A stretch of 64,000 bases of DNA, from positions 62,001-126,000 of the IMG/VR virus record IMGVR_UViG_3300032288_004964; one strand, given 5' to 3'. The position numbers and the translations under genes are program-made. The notes beneath the pieces were generated by a model. It searched no databases and was not told the DNA's origin. It was given only the letters and a program-made list of their open reading frames with translations. Position 1 is the first letter of the stretch; each line of letters begins with the position of its first letter. Below are positions 3,253 through 54,035 of the stretch, one piece after another.

Positions 3253-3512
3253 ATTAACTTTATTTTCAAATCACCAGTTCCTTTTATTAGTCTATGATAA
3301 ATACCCATTGGTATAAATACTTCTCCTTTTATTTCTTTGGGTAATTCATTATCTATTTGAATCATCCAATCTGTTTTACCAATAGATTCGATTATTCTAT
3401 CTTCTCTATCACGATGCCACATAAATTCACCAGAATCAGTATCATTATGGAACTCTCTGATAAAGATATTATCACTTAATTTATTTTCTTGAAATGGTAA
3501 CATATGAATCAA
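3237..3512 (-). CDS. Small cupin-fold protein
   Basis: WHRDREDR...FIPMGIYHRLIKG cupin motifs. Confidence 0.6.
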   Translation of the reverse strand: MIHMLPFQENKLSDNIFIREFHNDTDSGEFMWHRDREDRIIESIGKTDWMIQIDNELPKEIKGEVFIPMGIYHRLIKGTGDLKIKLIKNPS

Positions 3513-3928
3513 TTATGCTTTGTAAATGAAATTTGTAAATGGTGAAAATTATCAACTTCCTTACCAAAGAAATACAATCTATGATTTTTATACTTTACAA
3601 GATTATGACTAGCTGGATCTTCCGTTGTAGAATAAAACATATTTAAAATATAAAAATCTTCGCTTTCCATGTAATCAATCATCCTTTCAAAAACTTCCTT
3701 TACATCATCATAGGTAAAAGACTTAGAACGTTCTTCATAATAGCCTGAATTTTGTACAACTCCAACAAATACTCTTATAGAGTCAGGACTAAGAACTCCA
3801 CCAGTTCCTTTCATCTCACGAACATCTACAAAATAACCTAAATCTGTTAGTTCTAATAAAATATCATTTAACTCATTAGTATTTTTATTAAAAGATTCAA
3901 ATATTTTATATTTTTTTAAGTGTTTCAT
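3509..3928 (-). CDS. Hypothetical, putative head-packaged protein
   Basis: N-terminal MKHLKKYKIFES; TATATA promoter 4 nt upstream of ATG. Confidence 0.55.
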   Translation of the reverse strand: MKHLKKYKIFESFNKNTNELNDILLELTDLGYFVDVREMKGTGGVLSPDSIRVFVGVVQNSGYYEERSKSFTYDDVKEVFERMIDYMESEDFYILNMFYSTTEDPASHNLVKYKNHRLYFFGKEVDNFHHLQISFTKHN

Positions 3929-3931
3929 ATA

Positions 3932-5269
3932 CTATATATAAAAATAATCAGTATAATTATTTGACTTTAATCGGTATCTCATAATTTGTCTATCTATTCC
4001 CGATCCATCAACTGCTTTTGATATAGATTCATAAATAATTCCATTTATAGAGACCGATTTTAGTTTTGGTATGCCTGTTTCTTTTAACTCGACCACTTTA
4101 TCCAAATAAAACCAACTTGGATATGATTTTGAGTTAAGTCTCCAATTTATATAATCATGTGTTTTTTTTAATTCTTTTACAGCTTCTGTTATTGACCCAT
4201 ATTCTTTTCCTTCTATTGATATTCTTTCTTTTTTTGACAGATGTGGATCAACTTCAATAAATTTATTATACTTTATGTTTAGATCATTATCTTTGAATAG
4301 ATAGTTTTTGAAGTGAGATGACTTTAATCTTGAACGTATTAAAGACCTATCAATACTAAGTCTTTCAACAGATTCGGAAATAGATTTATATTCTATATTA
4401 TCAATGATTATTTCTTTTTTAGTCTCCTGGTCAAACTTTTTTCTTTTTTCTTGAAGTCTAATCTTTATTTTTAATTTTAAATCTTCGCCAATATATTCAT
4501 AAAATTTATATCTTCTTTTAAAAAATCTATTCGGTACACAATCAATATATAAAATTAAACCATCTATATCTTTTTCAATAATTAGTCTATCGATCTTATC
4601 AAATTCCTCATTTTCTCTAATTTTTAATTTTCCAAAAATATACCTTAAATCCTCCCCAAAGAACTCGTAAAAACCATAAGCATTTTTAAGAAAATTATGG
4701 TCTACTCTTTTTTTAATTAATGATAGTTCGTTTAGATAATCATCAATATTTCCAAATTTTATCTCGTTTCTAATAAATTCACATCTTTCTTTAAATTCAT
4801 CATTATATTTCTTCCACTTTTTTTCATTTTTTAATTTAGATTCTGTAGATAAAATACTCTTATGTATATTTTTTTTAAGATTTTCTTTGTATATCTTAGC
4901 TTTTTCCAAACCAAATGCTTCTTCATAGGTTTTACCCTTTTTGGGACTATTTTTAGATATCTTCTCTCTTATTAATTCTAAATCAGGATGATTAGATAGA
5001 GTATCTCCTCCATCACCACCAGGAGCGATATTATATCCTATTTTTCTATCAGTTGATTTATAATATGATATCCAATAAATCTCCTTCTTTGAAAGTACAT
5101 TATAGTCATCAGTTTCATCAATAATTTCTTTGATGAAATTTTCCATTCCATATTTTTTTAAAGACCTACTAATTATCAATCCTGATCCAAAATAGTTGGG
5201 ATCTGATGTGGTGTCTTTGCCTATATAAATTTTATTATTTACAAGATTGGTTATTTTATATATTTGCAT
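3932..5269 (-). mobile_element. Free-standing GIY-YIG (Seg-like) homing endonuclease
   Basis: QIYKITN..N.KIYIG, YFGSG, GYNI..GGDGG; three C-terminal Y.SI..A...L NUMOD1-like repeats. Confidence 0.85.
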
Positions 5270-5322: not shown

Positions 5323-5901
5323 TTACCAAAATCCCGGGTAGGATTTATTGTTCCACAAGTGACCAAATTTATTAATTCTACACGCCCAGTAACCAGCAGT
5401 AGTTTTGTCTTTTTTTGCGGGGCAATTCATGCGACTGGAAAATGCTTTTCTTGCTTTAGGATTACTAACTTTAGCAGTCAATCCACCTTTTATATCACCA
5501 AATGAAATCTTTTTAACCCTGCCAGTTTTAGGATTTTTAACATAAACATAATATTTTTTACCCGATCCGGTGTTTCTCATTGGGTAATTTAATTTAACTT
5601 CTTTTCCGTGATATTCAGCCTCATTTAGTTCTTCAATGTTTTCCATTGGTATATCTAAAGGAACTAACTCACCGTTGTACATTCCAAACTTACCAATATC
5701 AGTTGATTCATATAATTCTTTATCAACATCACATAGATTAACTCTACCTAAGTCAAATAGTTCTCTAGCTTCTTTGATAACCTCATAAAAAGCTTCTGAG
5801 CCTGGTCTGAATATATTTTCAGTAATAGGTTTATTATTCTCTAAATGATATTTAAGAGATTCTGATACATTTATAGATTCTGTGAATTTTCTAATTTGCA
5901 T
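5323..5901 (-). CDS. Putative head protein with conserved viral C-terminal domain (DUF5754-like)
   Basis: KKYYVYV..KKISFGD..ARKAF..R..C..AGYWACR; N-terminal MQIRKFTES; internal LNEAE. Confidence 0.5.
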   Translation of the reverse strand: MQIRKFTESINVSESLKYHLENNKPITENIFRPGSEAFYEVIKEARELFDLGRVNLCDVDKELYESTDIGKFGMYNGELVPLDIPMENIEELNEAEYHGKEVKLNYPMRNTGSGKKYYVYVKNPKTGRVKKISFGDIKGGLTAKVSNPKARKAFSSRMNCPAKKDKTTAGYWACRINKFGHLWNNKSYPGFW

Positions 5902-5910: not shown

Positions 5911-6105
5911 TTATTTTAGTTCATTGAACTTTTCAATTTTGTTCTTTTTAACTTTTTCGAGTTCTTTTTCATCATGTTCAACTGGTTCAGTTTTGATATC
6001 AGGATTTAAATCCTTTTCCATTTCTAAAGAATCAGCATTAAATTCCATTTCTTGGTCTTTAGCTTTTTCTTCTTTAGTTTCGTTAAATCTTTTGATGTGT
6101 GTCAT
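5911..6105 (-). CDS. Small charged protein, putative head-packaged
   Basis: MTHIKRFNE N-terminus; in operon. Confidence 0.55.
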   Translation of the reverse strand: MTHIKRFNETKEEKAKDQEMEFNADSLEMEKDLNPDIKTEPVEHDEKELEKVKKNKIEKFNELK

Positions 6106-6107: not shown

Positions 6108-6431
6108 TTATTTACTAATTTTTTTAAGAACTTTAGCGCATTTTTCATACTCTTCATTTTCTTCCAGTTCTTTAAGATATTCTCTTAATTGTTCTTTATT
6201 AGATAATTCTAATTTTAGATTAAATCTAACTTCACCTAATTCTTTCATATCTTTTACTTGTTTATCTATTATTTTATTAATAACATCTCTTTTGAATTGT
6301 GACATTTTTGCAAATTCATTCCAATCATTTACACCATTATCTTTTAGAAAGTGTAAAATACCATCGGTACAAGAAGTTATTCTATCTATTGTAGATTCAA
6401 GTAAAAATTGATTATAATTATTTATTTTCAT
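6108..6431 (-). CDS. Hypothetical protein with C-terminal UVR-like motif
   Basis: MKINNYNQFLLES; EENEEYEKCAKV. Confidence 0.55.
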   Translation of the reverse strand: MKINNYNQFLLESTIDRITSCTDGILHFLKDNGVNDWNEFAKMSQFKRDVINKIIDKQVKDMKELGEVRFNLKLELSNKEQLREYLKELEENEEYEKCAKVLKKISK

Positions 6432-6473
6432 TAAAAGTATATATTATTTTTCCTTATCAAGAAATGTAAAATT

Positions 6474-13763: not shown

Positions 13764-14078
13764 TTACTTATTACTTAAAAAATTGGTAATTATAATCAAA
13801 TCTTCTTCATAATTACCTGTTAGATTACTCTCTAATCCACCCGCTTTTAGATATTCATTATGTAATCTTATATAATCATCTTCAAAGAATAAGTCTTTTG
13901 TTAGATCATTTTTAGAACTACTATTTTCAACATCTTTAACATTAACTAATGATGTATCTGTTTGAGTAATTGTTTTATTTTGAAGTCTTGTTTCACCGTA
14001 AGCTGGCCCAATCGGACCTACCAATTCTGTTCCCGATACTTCTTCATTTATAAAATCATTAAATTTTTTAATCTTCAT
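13764..14078 (-). CDS. Hypothetical, putative head-packaged protein
   Basis: Likely start at 14078: MKIKKFNDFINEE. Confidence 0.55.
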   Translation of the reverse strand: MKIKKFNDFINEEVSGTELVGPIGPAYGETRLQNKTITQTDTSLVNVKDVENSSSKNDLTKDLFFEDDYIRLHNEYLKAGGLESNLTGNYEEDLIIITNFLSNK

Positions 14079-14526
14079 CTTTAGTTGGTATTTTTTCAAA
14101 ATATTCATCTTGTTCTTGTAATGAATATTCATCTTTTTTGGTGTTATAGATTATATTGTAAAGGAATTTATCTTCTAATTTATGTTTATTGTCTCCTTTC
14201 ATGATAACTATACAAGATTCATCTTCAAATGAGTTAGTTATTCCAATTATTGGCAAACCTATTTTACCATTTCTATCATGTAAGTCACATATTACCTTTT
14301 TACCTTTCTCTAAAAGAGAAGATATTTTACTAAAAGTAGTATTTTTTGAAAGATATAAGAAGTCTTTCATATCATCATCTTTGGTGTTTTGATATAAATC
14401 TAAAAACCTTTTCTCTCTTTCTGATAATTTAGATTTACCAGAAACTTTATCCAATATTCTATTCATTTCTATTTCTTTAACAGATTCACCAAATAAATAA
14501 TATTTAAGTATTTTTTTAATTTTCAT
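14068..14526 (-). CDS. Hypothetical protein
   Basis: ORF after TATATA promoter; MNRILDKVS..LSEREKRFL motif. Confidence 0.55.
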   Translation of the reverse strand: MKIKKILKYYLFGESVKEIEMNRILDKVSGKSKLSEREKRFLDLYQNTKDDDMKDFLYLSKNTTFSKISSLLEKGKKVICDLHDRNGKIGLPIIGITNSFEDESCIVIMKGDNKHKLEDKFLYNIIYNTKKDEYSLQEQDEYFEKIPTKDED

Positions 14527-19790: not shown

Positions 19791-19994
19791 ATGAATTCAA
19801 TACATGTTACATCTAAAACAAGTTCTATTAGAGCTACTTGGACTCGTGAATTATCAGAGGATTTGAATATGTATCATGGGTTGGATTTTGAAGATGAGCT
19901 ATCTCAAATTCTAAAGAAAGAACTACTAAAAGAAAGATGTAGTGATAGAAAAAAATCTATTAATAAAATTTTCAAACTACAAAAAACATCATAG
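19791..19994 (+). CDS. Mini-protein: major capsid (gp23-like) fragment plus basic tag
   Basis: VTSKTSSIRATWTRELSEDLNMYHGLDFEDELSQIL matches the gp23 block VxAKxRxLKAxWxxELAQDLxAxHGLDAExEL..IL. Confidence 0.65.
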   Translation: MNSIHVTSKTSSIRATWTRELSEDLNMYHGLDFEDELSQILKKELLKERCSDRKKSINKIFKLQKTS

Positions 19995-21254: not shown

Positions 21255-22211
21255 ATGAAAAAGATTTTATTTCTATGTGCTCAACCAGATGTACCTTATT
21301 TTCATTGGCAGGTTGAGGTTATGATTCATAACTTTATGAAAGTTGGAATAAATCCAAATCATATTGAGATTTTATTTTCATATGATTCATCTCCATCTAA
21401 TCAAGGCAGAGAACTAGCCAGTAGATATCCTTATGTTAGATTCTTCTTTTACAAAAGAACAATTTTAGATAATGGTGGTTATATACCTATACTTAGACCA
21501 GATATCATAGAACAACATTTTATGAGTTATCCAGAGTTATCTAATGAAACTATTTTTTATCATGATTCGGATATTGTATTCAGAGAACTTCCAGATTTTA
21601 ATTCTATGAATAATGATGATATATGGTACCTAAGTGATACTATATCTTATATATGTGCTGATTATATAAAATCTAAATCAACTGAATTATTTATTGAGAT
21701 GTGTAGAATATCCGATATTGATCCTCAATTAGTAGAATCAAATAATTCTAATTCAGGTGGTGCTCAGTATCTAATGAAAGGTGTTGATTCTGAATATTGG
21801 AGAGAAGTTAAAGAAAAGGCTTTAGCTTTATATAAATATATGTCTAATAGAGAAAACATTGAAAGAAGGTCATTAACACCTGAAAAACTAGTTAATTATA
21901 ATCCTATACAAAAATGGTGTGCTGATATGTGGGCTGTCCTATGGATGTCTCTAAAAAGAGGAAATAAAGTTCAAATATCCAAAGAGTTAAATTTTAGTTG
22001 GGGAACATCACCAATTTCCGATTATAATTCATGTAAGATATTTCATAATGCTGGTGTTACAACATCTAGTGGTGGTTTATTTTATAAAGGCGAGTTTATT
22101 AATAAGAATCCATTTGAAGAGGATCTTTCCTTTGTTAAAAAAGACACCGCATCTTTTAAATATGTAGAGGCAATTTTATATGCTAAAGATATGAGAAATA
22201 AGCCTTTATAG
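21255..22211 (+). CDS. GT-A glycosyltransferase resembling peptidyl O-glycosyltransferases
   Basis: YFHWQ, Y.P.LRP, DSD (DxD), GGAQY, WCADMWA. Confidence 0.6.
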   Translation: MKKILFLCAQPDVPYFHWQVEVMIHNFMKVGINPNHIEILFSYDSSPSNQGRELASRYPYVRFFFYKRTILDNGGYIPILRPDIIEQHFMSYPELSNETIFYHDSDIVFRELPDFNSMNNDDIWYLSDTISYICADYIKSKSTELFIEMCRISDIDPQLVESNNSNSGGAQYLMKGVDSEYWREVKEKALALYKYMSNRENIERRSLTPEKLVNYNPIQKWCADMWAVLWMSLKRGNKVQISKELNFSWGTSPISDYNSCKIFHNAGVTTSSGGLFYKGEFINKNPFEEDLSFVKKDTASFKYVEAILYAKDMRNKPL

Positions 22212-22235
22212 TTTTTTAAATAAATATATACCTTT

Positions 22236-22385: not shown

Positions 22386-22403
22386 ACTTTTAATATATAC
22401 ATA

Positions 22404-24469: not shown

Positions 24470-24488
24470 TAATGATATTATTTTTTAA

Positions 24489-26430: not shown

Positions 26431-26431
26431 A

Positions 26432-36138: not shown

Positions 36139-36630
36139 ATGAGTAATATAACATCAAATAATTATTTAGACAACATAGTTGAACTAATTAAATCAATAGA
36201 TACTACTGAGTTAACAGACATAGTTGACCAAACTGCTATGTCAAAAGTAACAGAAGAGCAAAAAGTTTACTTTTGGATTAGACTTTATCTTAAAGATGAT
36301 AATATTAATGCTGAGATTGGAGATGATATTAGCATTAATTGGAAACAATCAGGTGAAAAATTAGTAACTAAGTTTATTTGTTATGGTAAAAAAGGATTAA
36401 ATAAAGATTACAATGATCAAGTAACAAATTATAATTCAGAAGATGATAAAAAATGCCTTTGTTTAATGATTGATACTAAAATGGTTAATTTTAATGATGA
36501 TATTCCTTTTATTAGATCTTTATTTAAAACCGGATATCACTATAAATATCAATTGGTGAAAAGAGAAGATTTACAATTTATTATTGACAAAAATGGAATG
36601 ATTTTAGATTACTTTGATTGTGATTTTTAA
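36139..36630 (+). CDS. Hypothetical protein
   Basis: 163-aa ORF after thyA. Confidence 0.55.
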   Translation: MSNITSNNYLDNIVELIKSIDTTELTDIVDQTAMSKVTEEQKVYFWIRLYLKDDNINAEIGDDISINWKQSGEKLVTKFICYGKKGLNKDYNDQVTNYNSEDDKKCLCLMIDTKMVNFNDDIPFIRSLFKTGYHYKYQLVKREDLQFIIDKNGMILDYFDCDF

Positions 36631-38234
36631 GAACAATCTGGGCAATCTACATTACCACTTCCATCACAAGAATAGCACTCAACCTGGCCTCTTTCATCAC
36701 AGTCAACACAACCTAATTCACCATCACCATCACAGTCTTCACATTTTATATAACCATCTTTACATTCGGTGCATTCAACTTTTCCACTAGCTGAACATTC
36801 ATCGCAATCAGTTTCATTTCCTTCTTCATCTTCGACATGACCAGTTCCGTCACAGTTAGAACAATCTATTTCACCTGAGGCATCACAATTAGTACACTCA
36901 TGTTGTCCTTCTCCAGAACATTCATCACATCTTGTATTTCCTCTGCCATCACATTCTATACAATCTACTTCTCCATCTCCTCCACAATCATGGCATTCTA
37001 TTCTACCACGACCACCACAATACTCACAAGAACCATTACCACCGTCAGTTTCTTCTAAATTATACTCATAACTTCCGTCATTATAATTTGATAATTTTCC
37101 TGTATTAGGATTATAATTTTTGAATGTATCCATATAAGGATAGTAATTATAATCATAACTTGGTAATTCAATTACTATTTCTTGCTCATCTACTGGTTTT
37201 CCATTTAGTAAAAACTTTGTAGCTTCATTACTATCTTGTCTTTCTTTATATAAGAATTCATTCTTAATTGCATATTCTTTGAATAATGTTTCATCTGCCG
37301 AATTATTAGTATAGATTCTGTCCATTATTTTTCTACCTAATTTATCAGTCCATAAAAGAGCTCTTCCTGTTATAGATGTTCCATCTTTTTTATTCATCAA
37401 AACAATCATTGAAACTTTTTCTGGATTTCTAACATAGATATCTAAGAATTTTTGACATTTTTTATGTCTCATACAAGAATTGCCTAATGTCCCATCCATA
37501 CTTTCATAATTTTCAGAAGAATAAAAATCTCTAATTTCTTCACCAGATACTATTTTAAATCTTAAGAAAGCTTCTTTTCTTATTTGTATTATTGATTTGT
37601 ATTTATTAACAAATTCTTCAAGATCTTTATCACTTACTTTCACACCTGCCTTATCCAATATTCTTCTTGCGAATCTACCTACTCCGATTTCACTTTTAAC
37701 TAAATTATCTGTTTGATAATCTAATCCTTGATCACCCATTATAATTTCACCATCACCATCACTATCAGTGTATTTAAAATGAACTACTCTAAGACCATTT
37801 GCATATGTATTTCTCCAGTATGATTTATTTGTGTTGCTTAAAGATGCCATCTCATCAGCTGTTAGTTCTTTTACAATTTGACCTATAGCTCCATTTAGTG
37901 GAATTCTAACATTCTTTATTTCATATTCTCCGTTTTTTTCTAAATTCTCAGATAAAGTATCATATGAAGTTCCTGGATTTATAACTTTTACTTTTAATGA
38001 TTTTAATTTATTCTCAGGTATAAATTTTATCATATCTTCTCTGTCTTTATCTATATCAATGTAATTCGTATTAACATCTACTTCCTTACCATTTAAAGAT
38101 AGTAGTTTACTGGATAAATCTGAATTGATATCATTAAGAACATTCATAAAGTCCTTAGTGTATTTAATATTGGCTTCTAAAAGTAGTTCTAATTTACTTT
38201 CATTTATAAAGTCAATGTATCTGTTAATTTTCAT
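36627..38234 (-). CDS. Putative packaged protein (SCM/GRALxW/MDRIY family) with C-terminal CxxCxGxG zinc-finger array
   Basis: MKINRYIDFINES; LGNSCMR, GRALLW, MDRIY, YPYMDTF; about 11 DnaJ-like CxxCxGxG units. Confidence 0.6.
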   Translation of the reverse strand: MKINRYIDFINESKLELLLEANIKYTKDFMNVLNDINSDLSSKLLSLNGKEVDVNTNYIDIDKDREDMIKFIPENKLKSLKVKVINPGTSYDTLSENLEKNGEYEIKNVRIPLNGAIGQIVKELTADEMASLSNTNKSYWRNTYANGLRVVHFKYTDSDGDGEIIMGDQGLDYQTDNLVKSEIGVGRFARRILDKAGVKVSDKDLEEFVNKYKSIIQIRKEAFLRFKIVSGEEIRDFYSSENYESMDGTLGNSCMRHKKCQKFLDIYVRNPEKVSMIVLMNKKDGTSITGRALLWTDKLGRKIMDRIYTNNSADETLFKEYAIKNEFLYKERQDSNEATKFLLNGKPVDEQEIVIELPSYDYNYYPYMDTFKNYNPNTGKLSNYNDGSYEYNLEETDGGNGSCEYCGGRGRIECHDCGGDGEVDCIECDGRGNTRCDECSGEGQHECTNCDASGEIDCSNCDGTGHVEDEEGNETDCDECSASGKVECTECKDGYIKCEDCDGDGELGCVDCDERGQVECYSCDGSGNVDCPDCS

Positions 38235-38316
38235 ATAAGTATATATTTAATATCCTAATTCAAAATAACTTTTTTTATAAAAATGATATAACACATGTAA
38301 TAAAATAAAAAAATTC

Positions 38317-40017
38317 ATGCTCGTAGAGACACAATATTTAAGTAATAGTAAGAAATTAGTAGTAAGTTATGTTGATAAATCCGGTGAAATCAAACTAAAA
38401 TACTACAATTGGGATAATCCAATGAAGTATATTTCTTGTGAGGATAATGATCCTCTAAAGCATCCTACATTTAGATCTTGGGATGGTAAGTCTGTTAAAC
38501 AAATAGAAGTTAGTCACCCAGATAGATACGCTATTTATGAGTTTTTAGATGACTTGCCTGAAGCAGAAAGAAATGAAATATTTGAATTTAATTTACCAAA
38601 AATATTTTTTATAGATATTGAAACTGAAATTGTTGATGGATTCCCAGAGGCGGCTGATGTTTTAGACCAACATGGTAATGTTACTAAAGAAGGAGCATCA
38701 ACTCAAGTTCTTTCTATATCAATTGTTTATGATGATAAAATCATTTTATTAGGTCTTAAGGATTTAAGTGAAGATGCTCAATTAAGAATAAAAAATAACA
38801 GTAACAAATACTTTGAAAAGTTTGGTGCTGATTATAAATTCAAATATATCAAGTATGATGATGAGTTTGATATGTTATATGCTTTCTTCTACAAGATGAT
38901 TCCAAAAATGCCTATACTAACCGGTTGGAACTTCCTTAAATATGACTGGTTATATTTAGTAAACCGTTCAAGAAAAATATCTAAGTGGACTAATGGTAAA
39001 GAATATAAAATTGATCCAGCAGTTTCTTCCCTAACAAAAAGATTAAATAAAATCTGGTCAACTGATTTTGAAGTTCCTGCCCATAGAATGATATTTGACT
39101 ACATGCAATTGTATGAAGTTTGTGATACTTCTATTAAAGTAAAGGAATCATCAGGGTTGGACTTTGTGGCTAGTAAATTAGTAGGCGTTGAGAAAGTTAA
39201 ATATGTTAACTCAATTTATAAATTGAAAGAAGACTCTACTATTAACGGGTATTCTTTTAAAGAAGGTGACATTTGTAGAACAGAAGGAGATACTTATTAT
39301 ATGTATGTTGGTACTGAGAGAGTAATATTTACAAAAGAAAACTTTTCAAAGCATAAAAGTCTTTTCAAAGAAGTAAATGTTTCTAACCTACAGAAGTTAT
39401 ATGAAGAAGATTTTGAAATCTATATGTACTATAACGCGGTTGACTCGGTTTTAGTTCAAAAGATTCATGATGCTCGTAATTACATTTCAATTATTTATGC
39501 GATTTCATCATTGGCTAAGATAAGAATTGTTGATGTTGTTTCTCAAATGAATAACGCTCTTGGTTCATTAGCTATTACAGAAGGAGTTTTAAGAAATAGA
39601 TTCCGTGAGATGGATAATATTGTTCTTTTCCGTGATGAAAAAGGAGATGCTGAATCAACTATCGCTGGTGGGTGGGTAAAGGATCCTGTTGTTGGTATGA
39701 ATCAGTGGTGTGTTTGTTATGACTTTGCGTCACTATATCCAACAACACAAAGACAATTCTTTATAGCACCTGAAACATTTGTCGGTGTTCAAGATGAGAA
39801 AGATAAATCTAAATGTTCAAATGGTAGACCAATTGATTTGGATAAACATGTTTTATGTGTTAATGGTGTTGTTTTTGAGAAAAGAGTATCACCAACTTTA
39901 ACTATGTTAGAGGATGTTTATGCTGATAGAAAGAAGGCTAAGAAAGTGATGATGGATAAAAAAGAAGAATTGAAATCTATTATAGATGAGATTAAACAGT
40001 TAGAAGCAGAATTATAA
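38317..40017 (+). CDS. DNA polymerase B, N-terminal part (exonuclease plus motif A) of a split gene
   Basis: DIETE, TGWN...YD, YNAVD, GGWV, DFASLYP; ends in fingers helix without NSxYG or YGDTD. Confidence 0.85.
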   Translation: MLVETQYLSNSKKLVVSYVDKSGEIKLKYYNWDNPMKYISCEDNDPLKHPTFRSWDGKSVKQIEVSHPDRYAIYEFLDDLPEAERNEIFEFNLPKIFFIDIETEIVDGFPEAADVLDQHGNVTKEGASTQVLSISIVYDDKIILLGLKDLSEDAQLRIKNNSNKYFEKFGADYKFKYIKYDDEFDMLYAFFYKMIPKMPILTGWNFLKYDWLYLVNRSRKISKWTNGKEYKIDPAVSSLTKRLNKIWSTDFEVPAHRMIFDYMQLYEVCDTSIKVKESSGLDFVASKLVGVEKVKYVNSIYKLKEDSTINGYSFKEGDICRTEGDTYYMYVGTERVIFTKENFSKHKSLFKEVNVSNLQKLYEEDFEIYMYYNAVDSVLVQKIHDARNYISIIYAISSLAKIRIVDVVSQMNNALGSLAITEGVLRNRFREMDNIVLFRDEKGDAESTIAGGWVKDPVVGMNQWCVCYDFASLYPTTQRQFFIAPETFVGVQDEKDKSKCSNGRPIDLDKHVLCVNGVVFEKRVSPTLTMLEDVYADRKKAKKVMMDKKEELKSIIDEIKQLEAEL

Positions 40018-40665
40018 TACTCTAATTGTCTTAAAATCTATATTTGGAAGTTTTTCTTTTACTACTCTTGTTGCTTTTGTTATGTATTTAGCATTATCAT
40101 CGTAGAAAATAGCTTTTTTGAATCCAGTTTCATTAAGTATTTCAACTATCTTCTCACCTTTCCAGTGTCCAGCATTTTTAGTATTATCAGGTATCATGTG
40201 TAATCCAAACTTAGGAGTTTCTAATCCAAATTCTTTTAGTTTGGATTCTATTTTACTTCTTAGACTTTCGGGTCTTGCTGTTACAATACATTTGTTTTTA
40301 ATTGACGAGTATAGATTAGATAATTCTTTAATGCTGGTAGGTAAACTTATATCAGATAAATGAAAAACATTAGGAGTTACTAAATAAACTCTTTTACCTT
40401 TTCTTACCCAGTTACCAAATTCTTTAATTTCATCTTTAGGGTCATTTACATATATTCTACCATTTTCCCATTTTAAGTCTCTTAAATTAACTCCTATTCT
40501 TCCTACAGATGTTTTAAGCATATCACCAATACTTAAATCTTCTTTTAGAAATTCAATAGCTAGCTCTTCAAAACTTGGGGAATTAACAAGCGTGTCATCA
40601 AAGTCAAAGATGTATAAGGTATCTTTGTTTTCTAAAAACTCATTAAATTTTTTAATCTTCATCAT
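40012..40665 (-). CDS. HAD phosphatase (Swiss-Army-knife RNA repair-like)
   Basis: IFDFDDTLV.SP, VTAR, K, FYDD. Confidence 0.7.
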   Translation of the reverse strand: MMKIKKFNEFLENKDTLYIFDFDDTLVNSPSFEELAIEFLKEDLSIGDMLKTSVGRIGVNLRDLKWENGRIYVNDPKDEIKEFGNWVRKGKRVYLVTPNVFHLSDISLPTSIKELSNLYSSIKNKCIVTARPESLRSKIESKLKEFGLETPKFGLHMIPDNTKNAGHWKGEKIVEILNETGFKKAIFYDDNAKYITKATRVVKEKLPNIDFKTIRVL

Positions 40666-42649: not shown

Positions 42650-43108
42650 TTATTTCTTTTTAGCTTTTGCTTCTTTTGCTGCTTTTTTCATTGGTTCCTT
42701 TTTATTACCGTCTTTATCTAAATCTAAGAAATCAGGTTTAGCTTTTTTACCACCCTTTTTTTCTTCTTTATCATCTTCTTTCTTATCTTCCTTTTTAGCC
42801 TTTTGTTTATCTAAGAACGCTTGAAACCCTTTATTAATTTTTTTCTTTTCAACTACTATAGGATTAACTTCTTCATCTCCCCAAGTTTCTTCTTCTTTTT
42901 CTTCTTCTTTTTCTTCATAGTTTCCACCACACTCACAATCAGTGCAATTACATCCACATTCTGGACAATTTTCTTCACCATTTCCAGGCATTACCTCATC
43001 ATTACCATCTTCTGGCATTACATTAGGCATTACTTCTTCAGGCTCATTTGTAAATCTATCACCAAGATCTTGTCCAGAGAAGTGTTCGAATTTTTTTAGA
43101 TATTTCAT
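42650..43108 (-). CDS. Charged head/core-like protein
   Basis: MKYLKKFEHF; Cys cluster; KPDFLDLDKDGNKKEPMKKA EF-hand-like motif. Confidence 0.55.
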   Translation of the reverse strand: MKYLKKFEHFSGQDLGDRFTNEPEEVMPNVMPEDGNDEVMPGNGEENCPECGCNCTDCECGGNYEEKEEEKEEETWGDEEVNPIVVEKKKINKGFQAFLDKQKAKKEDKKEDDKEEKKGGKKAKPDFLDLDKDGNKKEPMKKAAKEAKAKKK

Positions 43109-43180
43109 ATCGGCTATATTATTTTTATAAAGTATATATAAATGTTTTATTTTCATTTTGTTGATTTTAATATATACTTT

Positions 43181-44506
43181 ATGAAAATATTTAATTTTTT
43201 AGATTTTATTTTAGAAGCAAAAGAAGAATTACTTCTTCCTATTATAATATCTGAAGAATTTTATGAAAAACTTAACAGAATAGATTCACCAATTGCTAGT
43301 AAATTAAAAGCAATTAAAAAAGACAGACCGTTAGGTGAATATTCTTTTATATCCTCTGGTAGTTCTGAAGAAACTGTTAAATATACAGATACCTATAAGT
43401 TAGATAAGTATCTTAGAGATAAATATGATACTAGTATAGATTTTGATACATCTAAATATTTAAAAAGAGTTGTTGAGTGGGATCCATCGGATGGTATATG
43501 GAATGAAAATAGAACAGAAATTAGAATAGGTAGATTTATTAAAAGATTTTTTGGAACAGAATATACTGATGCTGAGATTGAAAAATTTGTTAATCAATGG
43601 AAGTCTTTAGAAGAAAACTCAACATTCGAATCATGGGAAGGTTGGAAGATTAAAGACGGATATAGGTCTAATAAGTACTTCTTTGCTGAGAATAGTTCTA
43701 ATCCTCTTATAAATTCTTGTATGAATGACCAAATTCATTTAGTAGAATTCTATCAATATTGTTCTTCTGCTAAATTACTTGTGCTTCTAGATGAAGATGG
43801 TTTGATATTAGGTAGAGCTTTAGTTTGGACTGATTATATGAATAGAGTAATAATGGATAGAGTTTATTATGCTTTAGATAAAGATTATCATAAATTTGTT
43901 GATTATGCTAAAAAGAATGGTTGGTTTTATAAAAAGAGAAATATAAGTGGAGGTTCACCATTTATTAAAGATGGTAAAGAAGTTTCTCTTAAAACTAAAG
44001 TAAGTGTTACTAATGTATTTAACTATCAAGATGAGTGTGAAGATTCCTTTCCATATATGGATACTTTTTATTATGCTCAAGGTGAGTGGTGTATGAATTA
44101 TGAGCCATCTAATGGTGAATATTATAAACTAAATGATACAGACGGTGCATTTGAACACCATAATAACTTATATGATGTTCACGGCCAATCAATATCTCAT
44201 GATATTGAGGATTATTATGTTCATTCTAATGAACAAGATGGTTTAATTTATAGAGATGATTCTATCTATGTTGATTATAGTGGAGGTCAAGGATTTAATG
44301 ATTACACATTTAGTGATTGGATTGAGAAGTCATACTTAGAAAATCCAAAGAATGGATTCGTAAAATCTGGAGAAGAATGGTATAATAAAAACCATTGTGT
44401 TTGGTCTGAGAAAGAAAAATCTTGGATTTATAGACCTGATGCTATTTGGGTTAAAAATGATTGGGTTAGTTGGGATAATTTTAACCCTGGTGGAAATAAT
44501 ATATAG
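43181..44506 (+). CDS. Paralog of 36627..38234 (putative packaged protein)
   Basis: MKIFNFLDFILEA; IGRF, EKFVN, NSCM, GRALVW, MDRVY, FPYMDTF. Confidence 0.65.
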   Translation: MKIFNFLDFILEAKEELLLPIIISEEFYEKLNRIDSPIASKLKAIKKDRPLGEYSFISSGSSEETVKYTDTYKLDKYLRDKYDTSIDFDTSKYLKRVVEWDPSDGIWNENRTEIRIGRFIKRFFGTEYTDAEIEKFVNQWKSLEENSTFESWEGWKIKDGYRSNKYFFAENSSNPLINSCMNDQIHLVEFYQYCSSAKLLVLLDEDGLILGRALVWTDYMNRVIMDRVYYALDKDYHKFVDYAKKNGWFYKKRNISGGSPFIKDGKEVSLKTKVSVTNVFNYQDECEDSFPYMDTFYYAQGEWCMNYEPSNGEYYKLNDTDGAFEHHNNLYDVHGQSISHDIEDYYVHSNEQDGLIYRDDSIYVDYSGGQGFNDYTFSDWIEKSYLENPKNGFVKSGEEWYNKNHCVWSEKEKSWIYRPDAIWVKNDWVSWDNFNPGGNNI

Positions 44507-44509: not shown

Positions 44510-45295
44510 ATGGAAATTATTAAATTTAAAAAATATTCTTTACAAGATTCAATTTTGAATGACTTTTTAACCTCATTTGACAAAATGATTGTTGAATCCG
44601 ATGAAACTGGTTATAAGGAAATGGAGAAAAAGATAATATCTGACCTAAAATTGAATACTAAATTAGTTTTTACATTCGGTGCTGGTATTGGAGCTTTTTA
44701 TCCTATTGTTGATAAATTAATGAAGAATATGAATATAGATTCTATTGAACTAACTCCAGATAGAATTGTTTTATTAACTATAGCCGCTGTTACTATTATA
44801 TTTATAGAAGAAAAGAAATTCAAATCAGCTGAAGAAGAAGCAATTTTAGTTAAAGATTCTAAGTCAATGTTGGAAGAGTTAAAGATGATGGGTATTGGTA
44901 ATGGAATAGTTAAGAAATTAATAAAAGGATTAAAGTCTATTACAAATATATTTTCACTTATTGGTAAGCACTTAGGTGCTGTTGTTGGTGGATTTATTGA
45001 TATGTTTGCTTATACAGCTATGTTAATACCTATAATGAATGGTATCTCCTATATTATTGGTAAGTATGATATGAATTTAGATACTATATGTGATAATTTT
45101 ATGGGGTTAGCTATGGGTGTTGGTACGGTAATTGCTAAACATGGTATAGTAGAAATATTGAATAAGATAAAAGACAAGTTTCCTATTAGTAAGAAAAAAG
45201 TTATTGATGAAATAGAAACTCCAATCATTCAAAAGTTTGGTGATATTAAGGATAACAGTCCAGAGCAACAAGGTGATTTAATTAAGGAGCAGTAA
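44510..45295 (+). CDS. Hypothetical protein with hydrophobic helices
   Basis: TFGAGIGAFYP and several hydrophobic stretches; late-type promoter. Confidence 0.55.
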   Translation: MEIIKFKKYSLQDSILNDFLTSFDKMIVESDETGYKEMEKKIISDLKLNTKLVFTFGAGIGAFYPIVDKLMKNMNIDSIELTPDRIVLLTIAAVTIIFIEEKKFKSAEEEAILVKDSKSMLEELKMMGIGNGIVKKLIKGLKSITNIFSLIGKHLGAVVGGFIDMFAYTAMLIPIMNGISYIIGKYDMNLDTICDNFMGLAMGVGTVIAKHGIVEILNKIKDKFPISKKKVIDEIETPIIQKFGDIKDNSPEQQGDLIKEQ

Positions 45296-50965: not shown

Positions 50966-52417
50966 ATGTCAAAATTTAACACAACTGCCCCAAAGGCAAA
51001 AACTTTAACTGAAAACCTAGCAGGTGGTCAGGCTTACAAACAATCTGATGAACTAGCATTAGTATCATTGTTATTAACTTCATTTGTTAATGATCAATTC
51101 TATAAAAATGCTCAAACAACTCTTGAAGATTTAAGAAAACTTTCTGAGAAAGTAAAAGATAAAGAGTTTGTTGCGAAAGCCGCTATTTTCGCTCGTGACC
51201 GTTTTGGTATGAGAAGTATCACTCATGCTCTTGCTGGTGAATTAACTTCACAATTGAATGGTGCTGAGTGGGGTAAGAACTTCTATGATAAAGTAGTTGT
51301 CCGTGTTGATGATATGACAGAAATCATGTCATACTACTTAGCATATAAAACATCTAAGAATAATCCAAAGTTTCCAAATTCTTTGAAGAAAGGATTTGCT
51401 AAGGCTTTTGATAAATTTGACTCTTATCAACTTGCTAAATACAAAGGTGATAATAAGGAAGTTAAACTTGTTGACGTTGTGAACATTGTTCATCCAGTTC
51501 CAAATGCTAGAAACAAGTCTGCCTTAGAACAACTTATTAAAGGTGAACTAAAAAGCACAGATACTTGGGAATCTAAGTTATCACAAGCTGGTCAATTAGC
51601 TGAGTCTGAAGAAGATTTAACTAAATTAAAGTCTGATGCTTGGTCTGAGTTAATCATTGGTAAAAAGATTGGTTACTTTGCTCTTCTTAGAAATCTAAGA
51701 AACATTATTAACCAAGCTCCTACTGCTATTCCAGCAGCATGTGAGTTATTAGTTGATGAAAGAATGATTAAGAGCTCTAGGGTTCTTCCATTTAGATTCA
51801 CCACAGCTTATGATGAAATATCTAAGTTAGGTTCTTCTAAGGAAGTGCGTGATGTTTTAGTTGCTATCAATAAGGCTTTAGACATTTCAGTTTGTAATGT
51901 TCCAAAGTTTGATGGTGAAACATTAGTAGTTATGGATGTATCTGGATCAATGAGTGGTAAACCATCTGAAATAGCTTCATTATTTGGTGCTATTTTAGCT
52001 AAAGTTAATAACTCTGATGTTATGACTTTCTCTACTTCCGCTAACTATAAGCAATATAATCCAATGGATTCAGTATTGACTATTAGAGATGGATTTAGAT
52101 ATTCTGGTGGTGGAACAAACTTCCGTGCAATCTTTGAGAAGGCTAATAAGAAGTATGACAGAGTTATCATCTTGTCAGATATGCAAGGTTGGGTTGGTTA
52201 TGAAACACCAACTCGTCAATTTGCTGAGTATAAGAAAAAGTTTGGAGCTAATCCATTTGTTTACTCTTGGGATCTGGCTGGTCTTGGTACTTTACAGTTC
52301 CCAGAACAAAATGTCTTTGCTTTAGCCGGTTTTTCTGATAAAGTATTCGACATCATGAAGATGATGGAGTTGGACAAGAAAGCTCTTTACAATGAGATTA
52401 AGGATATACAGTTGTAA
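50966..52417 (+). CDS. rsr: Ro60/TROVE-domain RNA-binding protein with vWA domain
   Basis: N.AGG.AY, FY, YQLAKY, TWE..LS, ALLRNLRN, LPFRF..AY, MIDAS DVSGSM, GGT, ILSDMQ. Confidence 0.92.
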   Translation: MSKFNTTAPKAKTLTENLAGGQAYKQSDELALVSLLLTSFVNDQFYKNAQTTLEDLRKLSEKVKDKEFVAKAAIFARDRFGMRSITHALAGELTSQLNGAEWGKNFYDKVVVRVDDMTEIMSYYLAYKTSKNNPKFPNSLKKGFAKAFDKFDSYQLAKYKGDNKEVKLVDVVNIVHPVPNARNKSALEQLIKGELKSTDTWESKLSQAGQLAESEEDLTKLKSDAWSELIIGKKIGYFALLRNLRNIINQAPTAIPAACELLVDERMIKSSRVLPFRFTTAYDEISKLGSSKEVRDVLVAINKALDISVCNVPKFDGETLVVMDVSGSMSGKPSEIASLFGAILAKVNNSDVMTFSTSANYKQYNPMDSVLTIRDGFRYSGGGTNFRAIFEKANKKYDRVIILSDMQGWVGYETPTRQFAEYKKKFGANPFVYSWDLAGLGTLQFPEQNVFALAGFSDKVFDIMKMMELDKKALYNEIKDIQL

Positions 52418-52448
52418 AAAAAACCCACTCATTGAGTGGGTTTTTTTT
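52416..52448. terminator. Bidirectional intrinsic terminator
   Basis: AAAAAAACCCACTCA-t-TGAGTGGGTTTTTTT. Confidence 0.9.
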
Positions 52449-53202
52449 ATCCATTATCTTCTCTATAAGCATTTACAGAATCATTAATTTCTTGTCTATC
52501 TATTATAAATTTCTTAGTTTCTGTATCATATGAAGCTACTCCGTATAAGTCTTCGCTAATAAAAACTCCGATTAGAATATACCCTTCTTCATCATCAGTA
52601 GTATCCATATATTTATCAAAGTCTATCCCTTCTTTTCTATAGATATTTCTAAGTTTTTCTAGTCCTTCTAAGTATTCTTTATCTTTTGTTGAAATGTATT
52701 TATTATATATGTCTTTTAATTCTTTTGTATTTATCTCATCGCTTAAAAATGTTATAAAAAATTTATGATTGATACTTTCCTTTGTATTATCTACAGATTC
52801 TGGATGACCTACAGATAATGATGTAACTATATAAGTATTATCTTTTAATTCCAATCCTTTTGATTCCGCTCTACTAATCATTTCATCAATTGAGATATTA
52901 ATTGTATTTAGATTATCAATAACTTTACTAAAATCATTTTTACCTGATTTTATATTATATTGAATCAAGCAGTTATATAACATTCTATATGTCTCATTAT
53001 CATCAACTTCAGCGTTGACTGCTTTAAGTTTTGAATCAACTAAATATCTATATGTTCTAGCTGAAGCAAATTCTTTAACATCAAATAAACTATCATTGAA
53101 TGTGTCTAATGAAATAGATTTAAATGTCAAGAAGTCTTGATAATCTTTAGATGTTCCAAAACTTTCATTTATAGAAAAGTCATTATATCTTTTTAATTTC
53201 AT
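52447..53202 (-). CDS. Hypothetical, putative head-packaged protein
   Basis: MKLKRYNDFSINES. Confidence 0.55.
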   Translation of the reverse strand: MKLKRYNDFSINESFGTSKDYQDFLTFKSISLDTFNDSLFDVKEFASARTYRYLVDSKLKAVNAEVDDNETYRMLYNCLIQYNIKSGKNDFSKVIDNLNTINISIDEMISRAESKGLELKDNTYIVTSLSVGHPESVDNTKESINHKFFITFLSDEINTKELKDIYNKYISTKDKEYLEGLEKLRNIYRKEGIDFDKYMDTTDDEEGYILIGVFISEDLYGVASYDTETKKFIIDRQEINDSVNAYREDNG

Positions 53203-54035
53203 TTCTTAAAATTATTATTTAATATTATCATTTTAGTATGAGTAGAATGTTTAATAACAATTCCAAAATCTTCCATTACTTTTTCTTTAATAAAAGGAAC
53301 TATAAAGTCTTCCTCGGATATTATCTTATAAGAAGAAGGTATTTTCTTTTTAACAGTTTCTAATGATACTGGTAAATAATTTTCATTTAATTCTCTTTCC
53401 CAGTTATCAATATATCTATACTTTAGTAAGAAATGAACAAATGTTCTATAATTATTATCTATTGAATCCCATCTATCTTCAAATGATTTTAAATAGTATG
53501 GATTAGCTAATTCTCTAACTTTTTTAACATCTTCTTCAAATGACTTTCTTTCACCTTTGTGTATTTCAACAGAAGGTATCATATCTCTAATAGTTATCCA
53601 TTTGAATTGACCACCAAATACTTGTTGTTCCCAAAACTTTTTAATTACACTTGAATGTGAGTAAGAATAAACTTCGTGTATAACAGAACTTAAGTTAAGT
53701 AAAGGTCTTTTATATCTTGACAATTCAGAAACTACCTGGTTCCAATTACTTGTTAGTAAGGCATCTTCACCTAATATAGATTCTGCTTTTGAAAGCATTG
53801 TGTCATCTAAGTCATATCCAATTAACTTAACATCTGGTTTCATATTTTGAACAAGTGAAAGAAATGTTCCATTAGCGCATCCAAAATCTACAATAACATC
53901 AAAGTCTAATTTGTTTACAAAGAATAACTTGTCTTGCATTGACATTTTCATTCCCTCAATATATTCATCAAAGTCAGCGATTGGTTTATCACCTACTAAT
54001 TCTTCAAGAAATAGTTGCCAATTTAGTATTTTCAT
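53199..54035 (-). CDS. Class I SAM-dependent methyltransferase
   Basis: IVDFGCANG, GYDLD, LSSVIHEVYSY, IRD. Confidence 0.8.
   Translation of the reverse strand: MKILNWQLFLEELVGDKPIADFDEYIEGMKMSMQDKLFFVNKLDFDVIVDFGCANGTFLSLVQNMKPDVKLIGYDLDDTMLSKAESILGEDALLTSNWNQVVSELSRYKRPLLNLSSVIHEVYSYSHSSVIKKFWEQQVFGGQFKWITIRDMIPSVEIHKGERKSFEEDVKKVRELANPYYLKSFEDRWDSIDNNYRTFVHFLLKYRYIDNWERELNENYLPVSLETVKKKIPSSYKIISEEDFIVPFIKEKVMEDFGIVIKHSTHTKMIILNNNFKK

What the first reader, a model, noticed from the sequence alone, without database searches (positions are those of the whole stretch)
3509..54035. Shared N-terminal capsid-targeting-like peptide on about 13 proteins
The pattern M-K-(I/L)-x-(K/R/N)-(F/Y)-x-x-F-(I/L)-x-E-(S/A/E), or a looser variant, begins ORFs at 3928, 5901, 6105, 6431, 14078, 14526, 38234, 40665, 43108, 43181, 44510, 53202 and 54035. 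Known: T4 internal proteins use a roughly 10-aa capsid targeting sequence (MKTYQEFIAE-type) that the prohead protease removes after Glu. Inference: a large packaged and injected proteome, with a portable tag useful for engineering.
Basis: partly seen in the sequence, partly recalled or inferred. Interest (0 to 1): 0.6.

Follow-up and report, generated by a model that had tools for sequence, protein, structure and literature searches.

The report
Capsid-targeting-like tag in huge phage
A 385-kb freshwater phage puts the same 10-13-residue N-terminal peptide, built like phage T4's capsid-targeting sequence and like its own scaffold repeat, on about 62 otherwise unrelated proteins, so it probably loads many enzymes into the capsid for injection; this is not yet shown by experiment.

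Summary
All 13 positions are genuine ATG starts. Eight carry a strong shared N-terminal motif, two carry only its core, and three are indistinguishable from background. Across the 385-kb genome, 62 of about 450 genes carry the tag. A strict regex matches 23 N-termini against 0.12 expected by chance. The proteins behind the tag fall into 54 unrelated groups. They include RNA ligase 1, a CCA-adding enzyme, a NUDIX-kinase, a 2H/Acb1-like phosphoesterase, a HAD phosphatase and an ankyrin protein.

The tag is selected as a peptide. Orthologues keep M, the aromatic residues and Glu while the linker varies, and synonymous codon use is ordinary. Its core, [FY]-x-x-[FY]-[ILV]-x-E, has the spacing of T4's MKTYQEFIAE, where residues 4 and 7 target and residues 8 and 10 direct cleavage.

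The genome has a T4-type head module. Its gp21-like protease is fused to a scaffold that holds ten 14-residue repeats containing YSEYIAEN, the same pattern as the tag. The capsid protein propeptide contains SINE-N.

Best reading (confidence about 0.6): a scaffold-mimicking capsid-targeting and cleavage tag, greatly expanded in the Mahaphage-like huge phages. Packaging and cleavage remain untested.

The parts
3509..3928 (-). Tagged ORF, 139 aa, starts MKHLKKYKIFES; strong member (24.1 bits); weak paralogue of G000 332258 and 380715
   Evidence: no Pfam or PHROG family
3932..3938 (-). Promoter-like box TATATAG, 3 nt before the ATG at 3928
5323..5901 (-). ORF, 192 aa, starts MQIRKFTES; doubtful member (2.9 bits); matches phrog_7595 (function unknown)
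5911..6105 (-). Tagged ORF, 64 aa, starts MTHIKRFNET; strong member (22.1 bits); orthologue in LR745206 starts MKHIKRFNEA
6108..6431 (-). Tagged ORF, 107 aa, starts MKINNYNQFLLES; strong member with the T4-like core; TATATAC box at 6437-6443
13764..14078 (-). Tagged ORF, 104 aa, starts MKIKKFNDFINEE, then a conserved body beginning VSGTELVGP; highest score (25.2 bits). All 33 orthologous loci encode the tag (3 lack an ATG at that position, so the start there is GTG or unresolved). AF2 gives pLDDT below 50 for residues 11-41 (block mean 52 for 1-10) and a folded C-terminal domain
14068..14526 (-). ORF, 152 aa, starts MKIKKILKYYLFGES; not a member by score (-3.6 bits)
36627..38234 (-). Tagged ORF, 535 aa, starts MKINRYIDFINES; strong member with core; paralogues at G000 278319 and 336080, both tagged; function unknown, viral-only relatives
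40012..40665 (-). Tagged ORF, 217 aa, starts MMKIKKFNEFLEN, then a DxDxT-type HAD motif; weak DUF2608 and PNK-phosphatase matches
42650..43108 (-). Tagged ORF, 152 aa, starts MKYLKKFEHFSGQD (16.6 bits, no hydrophobic-x-Glu); true start is 43108, not 43156
43181..44506 (+). ORF, 441 aa, starts MKIFNFLDFILEA; core-only member; TATATAC box 3 nt before the ATG; true start is 43181, not 43142
44510..45295 (+). ORF, 261 aa, starts MEIIKFKKYSLQD; not a member by score (-6.5 bits) and has no Glu site
52447..53202 (-). Tagged ORF, 251 aa, starts MKLKRYNDFSINES; strong member (18.3 bits)
53199..54035 (-). ORF, 278 aa, starts MKILNWQLFLEE; core-only member; weak SAM-methyltransferase similarity; TATATAC box 3 nt before the ATG

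Best explanation
The shared N-terminus is a capsid-targeting and processing peptide of the T4 type. It is an amphipathic stretch of 10-13 residues with the core [FY]-x-x-[FY]-[ILV]-x-E. This core imitates the 14-residue repeat of the phage's own scaffold (NIAYSEY[IL]AENLDK) and a site in the capsid protein propeptide (SINE-N). Shown: the tag exists on 62 unrelated proteins, is conserved as a peptide, is an add-on to otherwise complete enzymes, and matches motifs of the head-assembly core. Inferred: during prohead assembly the tag lets the cargo co-assemble with the scaffold core. The gp21-like protease, which is fused to that scaffold, then cuts after the Glu, as it would cut the scaffold repeats. 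The mature cargo stays in the head and enters the next host with the DNA. The cargo of recognisable function is an RNA-repair and likely counter-defence set (Rnl1, a P-loop kinase (AAA_33) fused to NUDIX, a HAD/PNK-phosphatase-like protein, CCA-adding enzyme, 2H/Acb1-like phosphoesterase). Such proteins would gain from being present at the moment of injection.
For: (1) Enrichment and distinctness of the tag. (2) The 62 bodies fall into 54 BLAST groups with diverse Pfam families. (3) Peptide-level selection. Rnl1 orthologues at 60-85% identity keep M1, K2, Y6, F9 and E12 while the following linker varies in sequence and length. The 104-aa family keeps the tag in 33 contigs, although its length varies from 10 to 13 residues. 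Synonymous codon use in tags equals that in the bodies. (4) The tag is an add-on: residue 24 of the Rnl1 homologue aligns with residue 7 of T4 Rnl1, and AF2 leaves most of the N-terminal 41 residues unstructured (pLDDT below 50 for 11-41). (5) Match to T4. ipII and ipIII start MKTYQEFIAE. T4 mutagenesis places targeting at residues 4 and 7 and processing at residues 8 and 10 (PMC9026906), the same i, i+3, i+4, i+6 spacing. LR756501 even has MKTFNQFINE. (6) Hydrophobic-x-Glu at residues 7-14 occurs in 57 of 62 tagged proteins against 112 of 392 untagged ones. (7) T4-type head module: Gp23-family capsid protein (97 bits), gp20-like portal, and a gp21-like protease with GExxHP and VSSRxxG aligned to T4 H85 and S140. 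(8) The scaffold fused to the protease carries 10 of the proteome's 47 internal matches to the core regex. It has 4.6 [LI]xE per 100 aa against 1.28 genome-wide. All 80 orthologues have 9-11 repeats. (9) Co-variation in other lineages. In PAU, the scaffold gp152, the annotated internal capsid protein gp154 and three neighbouring proteins all start MKT[LI]xxLYE. In MA9V-2, tags read MK[TN]FxxF[IV]NE and the capsid protein propeptide contains EFINE-A. T4 gp22 starts MLKEQLIAE-A. (10) A tagged gene sits directly after the capsid gene, and this is conserved in relatives.
Against: There is no virion proteome, no N-terminal mapping and no RNA data. The protease assignment is weak by score: PF03420 gives 20-22 bits, below its cut-off, hhalign gives 66% probability, AF2 failed, and the PDB profile search found nothing. 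Sixty-two cargo genes (14% of the genome) is far beyond any known case. Two tagged proteins have membrane segments, one of them a PQ-loop protein. The T4 homologues of several cargo enzymes act in the cytoplasm and are not packaged. T4 gp61.1, which is not annotated as a virion protein, also starts MKTFKEFIKE. Tags are associated with ATG-adjacent promoter-like boxes (31 of 62 against 51 of 392), which hints at a link to the mode of expression. The basic N-part (K/R at positions 2, 5 and 6) has no T4 counterpart. The tag's P2 and P1' residues differ from those of the scaffold repeat.
Confidence: 0.6

Rival explanations
1. The peptide is a targeting or interaction tag for something other than the capsid, for example a common hub protein, chaperone, protease (degron) or membrane site. 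It resembles the T4 CTS only because short amphipathic helices look alike.
For: The cargo is mostly cytoplasmic enzymes and includes two proteins with membrane segments. T4 gp61.1 carries a CTS-like start without being annotated as a virion protein. No direct evidence of encapsidation exists.
Against: It does not explain why the same pattern is repeated ten times in the scaffold fused to the prohead protease. It does not explain why the pattern ends in the Glu-containing site seen in the capsid protein propeptide. It does not explain why tag and head-core motifs co-vary in T4, PAU and MA9V-2.
Confidence: 0.22
2. The conserved start is an expression feature. The host apparently uses no Shine-Dalgarno sequence, and many of these genes have a promoter-like box 3-5 nt before the ATG. 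The first codons might therefore be constrained as an initial transcribed or ribosome-loading region of leaderless mRNAs.
For: Tagged genes prefer the ATG-adjacent box layout: 31 adjacent against 8 distant, compared with 51 against 80 for untagged genes (Fisher p = 8e-6). All the codons involved are A/T-rich.
Against: Thirty-one tagged genes have no adjacent box and sit inside tightly packed arrays. Fifty-one untagged genes with the same adjacent box have diverse N-termini. Synonymous codon choice in tags equals that in gene bodies. Substitutions among orthologues are conservative at the amino-acid level and change tag length. The pattern hits show free synonymous variation.
Confidence: 0.1
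3. The resemblance is a by-product of composition or of paralogy: a 29% G+C genome rich in K, I, N, F, Y and E, or one expanded gene family.
For: The genome is 28.7% G+C and MK starts are common in it (29% K at position 2). A few tagged proteins are paralogues (groups of 6, 3 and 2).
Against: The composition-matched expectation is 0.12 against 23 observed. Internal Met positions give 1 match in 2091. The score distribution is bimodal. There are 54 unrelated groups.
Confidence: 0.02

Closest known systems
Capsid targeting sequence (CTS) of phage T4 internal proteins IPI, IPII, IPIII (Mullaney and Black 1996; reviewed in PMC9026906 and PMC3012670)
   Same: An N-terminal peptide of 10-19 residues on otherwise unrelated proteins. 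It has two aromatic or hydrophobic targeting positions three residues apart, followed by aliphatic-x-Glu. It occurs in a phage with a gp23/gp20/gp21-type head. The cargo is diverse and linked to host takeover or defence.
   Different: Here there are about 62 carriers instead of a handful. Most tags are 1-3 residues longer, with a basic K/R-rich start. The cargo is mostly acidic (median pI 4.9) and includes sizeable enzymes. The tag pattern is repeated ten-fold in a scaffold that is fused to the protease. Function is not tested.
Head-module proteins of Sphingomonas phage PAU (gp149, gp150, scaffold gp152, gp153, internal capsid protein gp154) and Chryseobacterium phage MA9V-2 (gp208 and others)
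   Same: Several head-associated proteins share one N-terminal motif with the scaffold (PAU) or with a site in the capsid protein propeptide (MA9V-2). Both are distant relatives by capsid protein (about 25% identity).
   Different: Only about five carriers each, with different motif wording (MKT[LI]xxLYE; MK[TN]FxxF[IV]NE). As far as the literature searches here show, the shared motif has not been described as a system.
Long propeptides of ejection proteins in phiKZ-like giant phages (SPN3US, 201phi2-1; PMC5694885)
   Same: Many proteins are packaged in the head and processed by a gp21-related protease after Glu. Conserved N-termini occur on diverged paralogues.
   Different: Those propeptides are mostly longer than 100 residues, the cleavage motif is A/S/G-x-E, only about eight proteins are cleaved, and no short portable tag is shared by unrelated proteins.
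Mobile regulatory cassettes (PeSL) of T4-type phages (PMC2839356)
   Same: Short conserved promoter-containing modules flank hypervariable accessory genes and could drive gene shuffling. Here promoter-like box plus tag-coding sequence forms a conserved module of about 50 bp.
   Different: PeSLs are non-coding early-promoter and stem-loop elements. Here the conserved part extends into the coding region and is conserved as a peptide.

Membership tests
T4-type capsid targeting sequence | Located at the extreme N-terminus and 10-19 residues long | tested here: met
   The tag starts at Met1. Glu of the hydrophobic-x-Glu site lies at residue 7-14 in 57 of 62.
T4-type capsid targeting sequence | Two targeting residues three apart (T4 Tyr4 and Phe7) | tested here: met
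   The matrix shows Y/F at position 0 (3.1-3.4 bits) and F at +3 (3.8 bits). These are invariant in orthologues. The T4 data come from PMC9026906.
T4-type capsid targeting sequence | Processing determinants: aliphatic at P3 and Glu at P1 (T4 Ile8 and Glu10) | tested here: met
   [LIVMFY]xE in 57 of 62 and [LI]xE in 38 of 62, against 29% and 16% of untagged N-termini. The strict core [FYW]xx[FYW][LIVMF]xE occurs in 21 of 62 against 2 of 392.
T4-type capsid targeting sequence | Shared by proteins that are otherwise unrelated | tested here: met
   54 BLAST groups among 62; diverse Pfam families.
T4-type capsid targeting sequence | Phage has a gp21-family prohead protease and a scaffolding core | tested here: inconclusive
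   PF03420 scores 20-22 bits, below its 27-bit cut-off. hhalign to T4 gp21 gives 66% probability, E 5.6e-5, with the His and Ser motifs aligned. The gene lies between portal and capsid genes. AF2 failed.
T4-type capsid targeting sequence | Carrier proteins are found inside the capsid with the tag removed after Glu | not testable with these tools
   No isolate and no proteome exist; only DNA metagenome runs hold the sequence.
T4-type capsid targeting sequence | Tag is sufficient to package a foreign protein | not testable with these tools
T4-type capsid targeting sequence | Expression at the time of head assembly | tested here: inconclusive
   Boxes of the form TATATA followed by C or G precede the capsid, protease, sheath-like and fibre genes and 22 of 31 box-adjacent tagged genes. 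Six replication genes have A or T after the box. The sample is small and there is no transcript data.
Sec or lipoprotein signal peptide | Hydrophobic core of 7-15 residues after a basic N-region | tested here: not met
   Tags alternate charged and aromatic residues and never have more than three consecutive hydrophobic residues (listing). Only 2 of 62 proteins have any membrane-like segment, and it is not at the N-terminus.
Single paralogous gene family | Similarity extends beyond the N-terminus | tested here: not met
   Only three small paralogue groups (6, 3 and 2 members); 51 singletons.

The most novel reading that the evidence does not exclude
A widespread clade of huge freshwater phages (relatives of the 634-735-kb Mahaphage genomes) uses a scaffold-mimicking 10-13-residue tag to pre-load its capsid with about 60 different proteins. 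These include a complete RNA-repair kit and candidate counter-defence enzymes. About 14% of its genes would then encode an injected proteome that acts before any phage gene is expressed. The tag would be a natural, evolvable loading address for the capsid.
Probability: 0.4. Interest if true: 0.85.

Novelty: new variant of a known kind. Interest (0 to 1): 0.68.

Why it matters
If the tag works as in T4, three things follow.

First, capsid targeting by a short N-terminal address would be an ancient and general feature of T4-type heads, not a peculiarity of T-even phages. It would have expanded here to a scale that changes how the role of huge genomes is seen, because a large share of their unknown genes would be injected cargo.

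Second, it offers a mechanism for targeting that is still unknown even in T4: imitation of a scaffold repeat. That is directly testable.

Third, it would give a sequence rule for predicting injected proteins in uncultivated phages, and a compact tag for loading foreign proteins into large capsids.

If the tag does something else, 14% of the genes of a common phage clade still share an unexplained address label.

Tried and rejected
There is therefore no binding test.
- The AF2 model of the protease domain was unusable (pLDDT 36), so no fold search was run. The PDB profile search with the protease-scaffold alignment found nothing.
- Public runs: only DNA metagenomes (freshwater, plankton, groundwater, lake) hold the sequence and there are no RNA runs. 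Transcript starts and timing could not be examined.
- Pfam, PHROG and NCBIfam leave most tagged proteins without a family. The ESM Atlas gives only viral hypothetical clusters for the 535-aa protein.
- Tenacibaculum phage PTm1 lacks the tag: 0 strict matches and 3 against 1 for the core pattern. It has only two ORFs with a different shared start.
- Jug gut phages (PMC12880540) were considered as the source because of similar size and G+C. This was not pursued, since the habitat here is freshwater and that paper mentions no such motif.
- Literature searches for the capsid targeting sequence, CTS-like motifs and Mahaphage found no description of an expanded tag system.
- A giant eukaryotic virus was considered early, because of an AAAATTGA-like motif upstream of 5901, an Fpg/Nei-like N-terminus (by eye) and glycosyltransferase-like genes. 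It was rejected on the T4-type capsid, portal, terminase and tail fibre genes.
Full report
**What the window is.**
The window is bases 62001-126000 of a 385,333-bp IMG/VR virus record. The record is 95% complete, linear, and 28.7% G+C. It has a T4-type head module:
- a Gp23-family major capsid protein (97 bits);
- a gp20-like portal (phmmer 3.6e-23);
- a large terminase and a tail fibre protein;
- a 712-aa protein between portal and capsid genes whose N-terminal domain resembles the T4 prohead protease gp21.

The evidence for the protease is as follows. PF03420 scores 20-22 bits, below its cut-off. hhalign gives 66% probability and E 5.6e-5. GExxHP and VSSRxxG align with T4 His85 and Ser140; that these are the catalytic residues is from my memory of the gp21 structure paper.

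The capsid protein is 72-74% identical to those of two uncultured phages of 634-642 kb and 53-56% identical to those of the 636-kb and 735-kb genomes. These sizes match the genomes over 634 kb of the Mahaphage clade, which were predicted to infect Bacteroidetes (PMC7162821). No Shine-Dalgarno-like sequence is apparent upstream of the starts inspected by eye, which would fit such a host. The DNA occurs in freshwater, plankton, groundwater and lake metagenomes, and no RNA run holds it. About 350 IMG/VR contigs encode close relatives of the protease-scaffold protein.

**Check of the observation.**
All 13 positions are ATG starts of open frames. A position weight matrix refined on the genome's N-termini gives this consensus: M-K-(H/Y)-(L/I)-K-(K/R)-(Y/F)-N-(E/Q)-F-(L/I)-x-E. 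A one-residue-shorter class starts M-I-K-K-Y-x-x-F-I-x-E.

The scores are bimodal: 59-60 genes lie above 8 bits and almost none lie between 4 and 8. In the window:
- eight ORFs are strong members (3928, 6105, 6431, 14078, 38234, 40665, 43108, 53202);
- two have only the core (43181, 54035);
- three are background (5901, 14526, 44510).

Chance is excluded. A strict regex hits 23 of 450 N-termini, 1 of 2091 internal Met, and 0.12 per composition-matched random set. Genome-wide there are 62 tagged ORFs totalling 13,823 residues. They are scattered on both strands, with arrays at 310-317 kb (11 of the 62) and 378-383 kb (7).

**The tag is portable and selected as a peptide.**
With the first 16 residues removed, the 62 proteins form 54 BLAST groups. 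The recognisable bodies are:
- T4-type RNA ligase 1;
- a CCA-adding enzyme;
- a NUDIX plus P-loop kinase fusion;
- a 2H/LigT/Acb1-like phosphoesterase;
- a HAD/PNK-phosphatase-like protein (window 40665);
- an NFACT-R protein;
- an ankyrin protein;
- a PQ-loop membrane protein.

None of the replication, nucleotide-metabolism, capsid-shell or tail genes identified here is tagged.

Orthologues support peptide-level selection. In Rnl1 orthologues at 60-85% identity, M1, K2, Y6, F9 and E12 are invariant, while the next eight or so residues vary in sequence and length before the conserved body begins. Residue 24 aligns with residue 7 of T4 Rnl1, so tag plus linker is an extension. The 104-aa window protein (14078) has orthologues in 33 contigs. 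All encode a tag of 10-13 residues in front of an almost invariant (V/I)SGTELVGP. AF2 leaves most of its N-terminal 41 residues without confident structure (pLDDT below 50 for residues 11-41) and folds the C-terminal part.

Nucleotide-level constraint is not visible. Synonymous codon use in tags is the same as in the bodies, and the DNA matches show free synonymous variation.

**Relation to T4.**
T4 ipII and ipIII start MKTYQEFIAE and ipI starts MKTFKEF. According to the review of Black's work, targeting depends mainly on residues 4 and 7 and processing on residues 8 and 10. The propeptide is cut off by gp21 after incorporation into the scaffolding core (PMC9026906; PMC3012670). The tag here has the same spacing: aromatic, aromatic at +3, aliphatic at +4, Glu at +6.

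The numbers are these:
- The strict core occurs in 21 of 62 tagged N-termini and in 2 of 392 untagged ones.
- Hydrophobic-x-Glu at residues 7-14 occurs in 57 of 62 tagged against 112 of 392 untagged.
- The residue after Glu is mostly S, E or N.

A DNA pattern for the T4-like core just after an ATG gave these counts:

| Genome | Matches | Control |
|---|---|---|
| This genome | 39 | 9 |
| LR745206 | 30 | 8 |
| LR756501 | 48 | 3 |
| LR756500 | 34 | 5 |
| T4 | 6 | 1 |

LR756501 includes MKTFNQFINE. The T4 hits include ipII, ipIII and gp61.1.

**Link to the head core within this genome.**
The 712-aa protease-scaffold protein carries ten tandem 14-residue repeats, NIAYSEY(I/L)AENLDK. Each repeat contains Y-x-x-Y-(I/L)-x-E-N, the tag's core. 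That protein holds 10 of the 47 internal proteome matches to the core regex, in 0.6% of the residues. It has 4.6 [LI]xE per 100 residues against 1.28 genome-wide.

The repeat is present in 9-11 copies in all 80 orthologues examined and in 13 copies in LR756501. It is degenerate in LR756500. T4 gp22 contains EWLAEN and starts MLKEQLIAE-A.

The protease-scaffold N-terminus reads MKPVLIVE-N and is invariant. This recalls the nine-residue self-cleaved N-terminus of gp21 (PMC9958956). The capsid protein propeptide contains SINE-N at a position aligned with T4 IFE-N, and INE is the commonest tag ending. A tagged NFACT-R gene lies directly after the capsid gene, which is conserved in relatives.

**Support from other lineages.**
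- In Sphingomonas phage PAU, the scaffold gp152, the annotated internal capsid protein gp154, and gp149, gp150 and gp153 all start MKT(L/I)xxLYE.
- In Chryseobacterium phage MA9V-2, five ORFs start MK(T/N)FxxF(I/V)NE, or MTTKFRSFITE in one case. One of them lies between the capsid assembly and protease genes, and the capsid protein propeptide contains EFINE-A.

So tag wording and head-core wording change together from lineage to lineage. That is what a targeting and cleavage signal predicts.

**Mechanism proposed.**
The tag forms a short amphipathic helix whose hydrophobic face (positions 4, 7, 10 and 11) imitates one scaffold repeat. This lets cargo join the scaffold core. The protease then cuts after Glu, as in the repeats. 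The scaffold falls into 14-mers and leaves, while the cargo stays and is ejected with the DNA. All of these steps are inferred.

Capacity is not a problem. One copy of each cargo protein is about 1.6 MDa, and ten copies of each are about 16 MDa. By my arithmetic from the copy numbers, that is of the order of T4's internal protein load.

**Caveats and rivals.**
- Tagged genes prefer a layout with a TATATA box 3-5 nt before the ATG: 31 of 62 against 51 of 392, and adjacent against distant p = 8e-6. However, half of the tagged genes lack the box, and untagged genes with the same layout have unrelated N-termini. An expression-only explanation is therefore weak.
- A different destination for the tag cannot be excluded.
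- Two carriers have membrane segments.
- T4 gp61.1 shows that the motif can sit on a protein not annotated as virion-associated.
- The timing evidence is only suggestive. Boxes followed by C or G precede head, sheath-like and fibre genes and 22 of 31 box-adjacent tagged genes, whereas six replication genes have A or T.

**Novelty.**
Searches of the held literature for the capsid targeting sequence, CTS-like motifs and Mahaphage found T4 work, phiKZ-like propeptides and engineering uses. They found no account of an expanded tag system or of scaffold-repeat mimicry. I therefore rate it a new variant of a known kind, of considerable interest but untested.

Noticed in passing
whole genome G000; in the window e.g. 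3932-3938, 6437-6443, 38239-38245, 43171-43177, 44500-44506, 54039-54045: A promoter-like box (T)AATATATA[CGA] occurs 137 times. Its distance to the next same-strand ATG has two sharp peaks, at 3-4 nt (47 cases) and at 17-26 nt (about 45 cases). The first layout implies leaderless or nearly leaderless mRNAs. A host-type TAnnTTTG element appears upstream of some other genes.
   Followed up: partly
window 19791-19994 (+); also G000 304199-304318, 127439-127693, 85134-85403: Short ORFs match pieces of the Gp23 major capsid protein family. The 67-aa window ORF matches Pfam positions 138-185 (E 2.7e-8) and has its own ATG-adjacent box. These may be capsid gene fragments or small capsid-derived proteins of unknown role.
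   Followed up: no
window 38317-40017 (+): The family-B DNA polymerase appears split. This 566-aa ORF has the exonuclease domain and only the first third of the polymerase domain. It is followed by the tagged HAD-like gene on the opposite strand. A similar N-terminal fragment is present in LR756501.
   Followed up: no
G000 29105-30454 (-) and 28654-29103 (-), outside the window: A PepT/M20-like tripeptidase gene lies in the head module two genes after the capsid gene. It could clear scaffold and tag peptides. Next to it is a very acidic 149-aa protein starting MKLKNYKELFEE.
   Followed up: partly
window 42650-43108 (-) and 43181-44506 (+): Two divergent tagged genes lie 72 bp apart with back-to-back boxes. 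Longest-ORF calling (43156, 43142, and 14132 for the 14078 gene) overshoots the real starts.
   Followed up: yes
window 50966-52417 (+): A TROVE/Ro60-like protein with a vWA domain, next to ribonucleotide reductase. Together with the tagged RNA ligase, kinase and CCA-adding enzyme, it points to a large RNA-repair and RNA quality-control repertoire.
   Followed up: no
T4 NC_000866 18966-19130 (locus L160): T4 gp61.1, a 54-aa hypothetical protein upstream of the primase gene, starts MKTFKEFIKE. This is a near-perfect CTS, which raises the question of whether it is an unrecognised internal protein.
   Followed up: no
PTm1 AP019524 224211-224432 and 208828-209517 (locus L043): Two PTm1 ORFs share a start of the form (M/L)(K/R)KLYxxISEN, ending like that phage's capsid protein propeptide site TINEN. 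This may be a small CTS-like system in a cultured Tenacibaculum phage.
   Followed up: partly
window 21255-30125: A cluster of about ten genes on both strands with glycosyltransferase-like N-termini (judged by eye only) lies between the structural genes and the nucleotide-metabolism genes.
   Followed up: no
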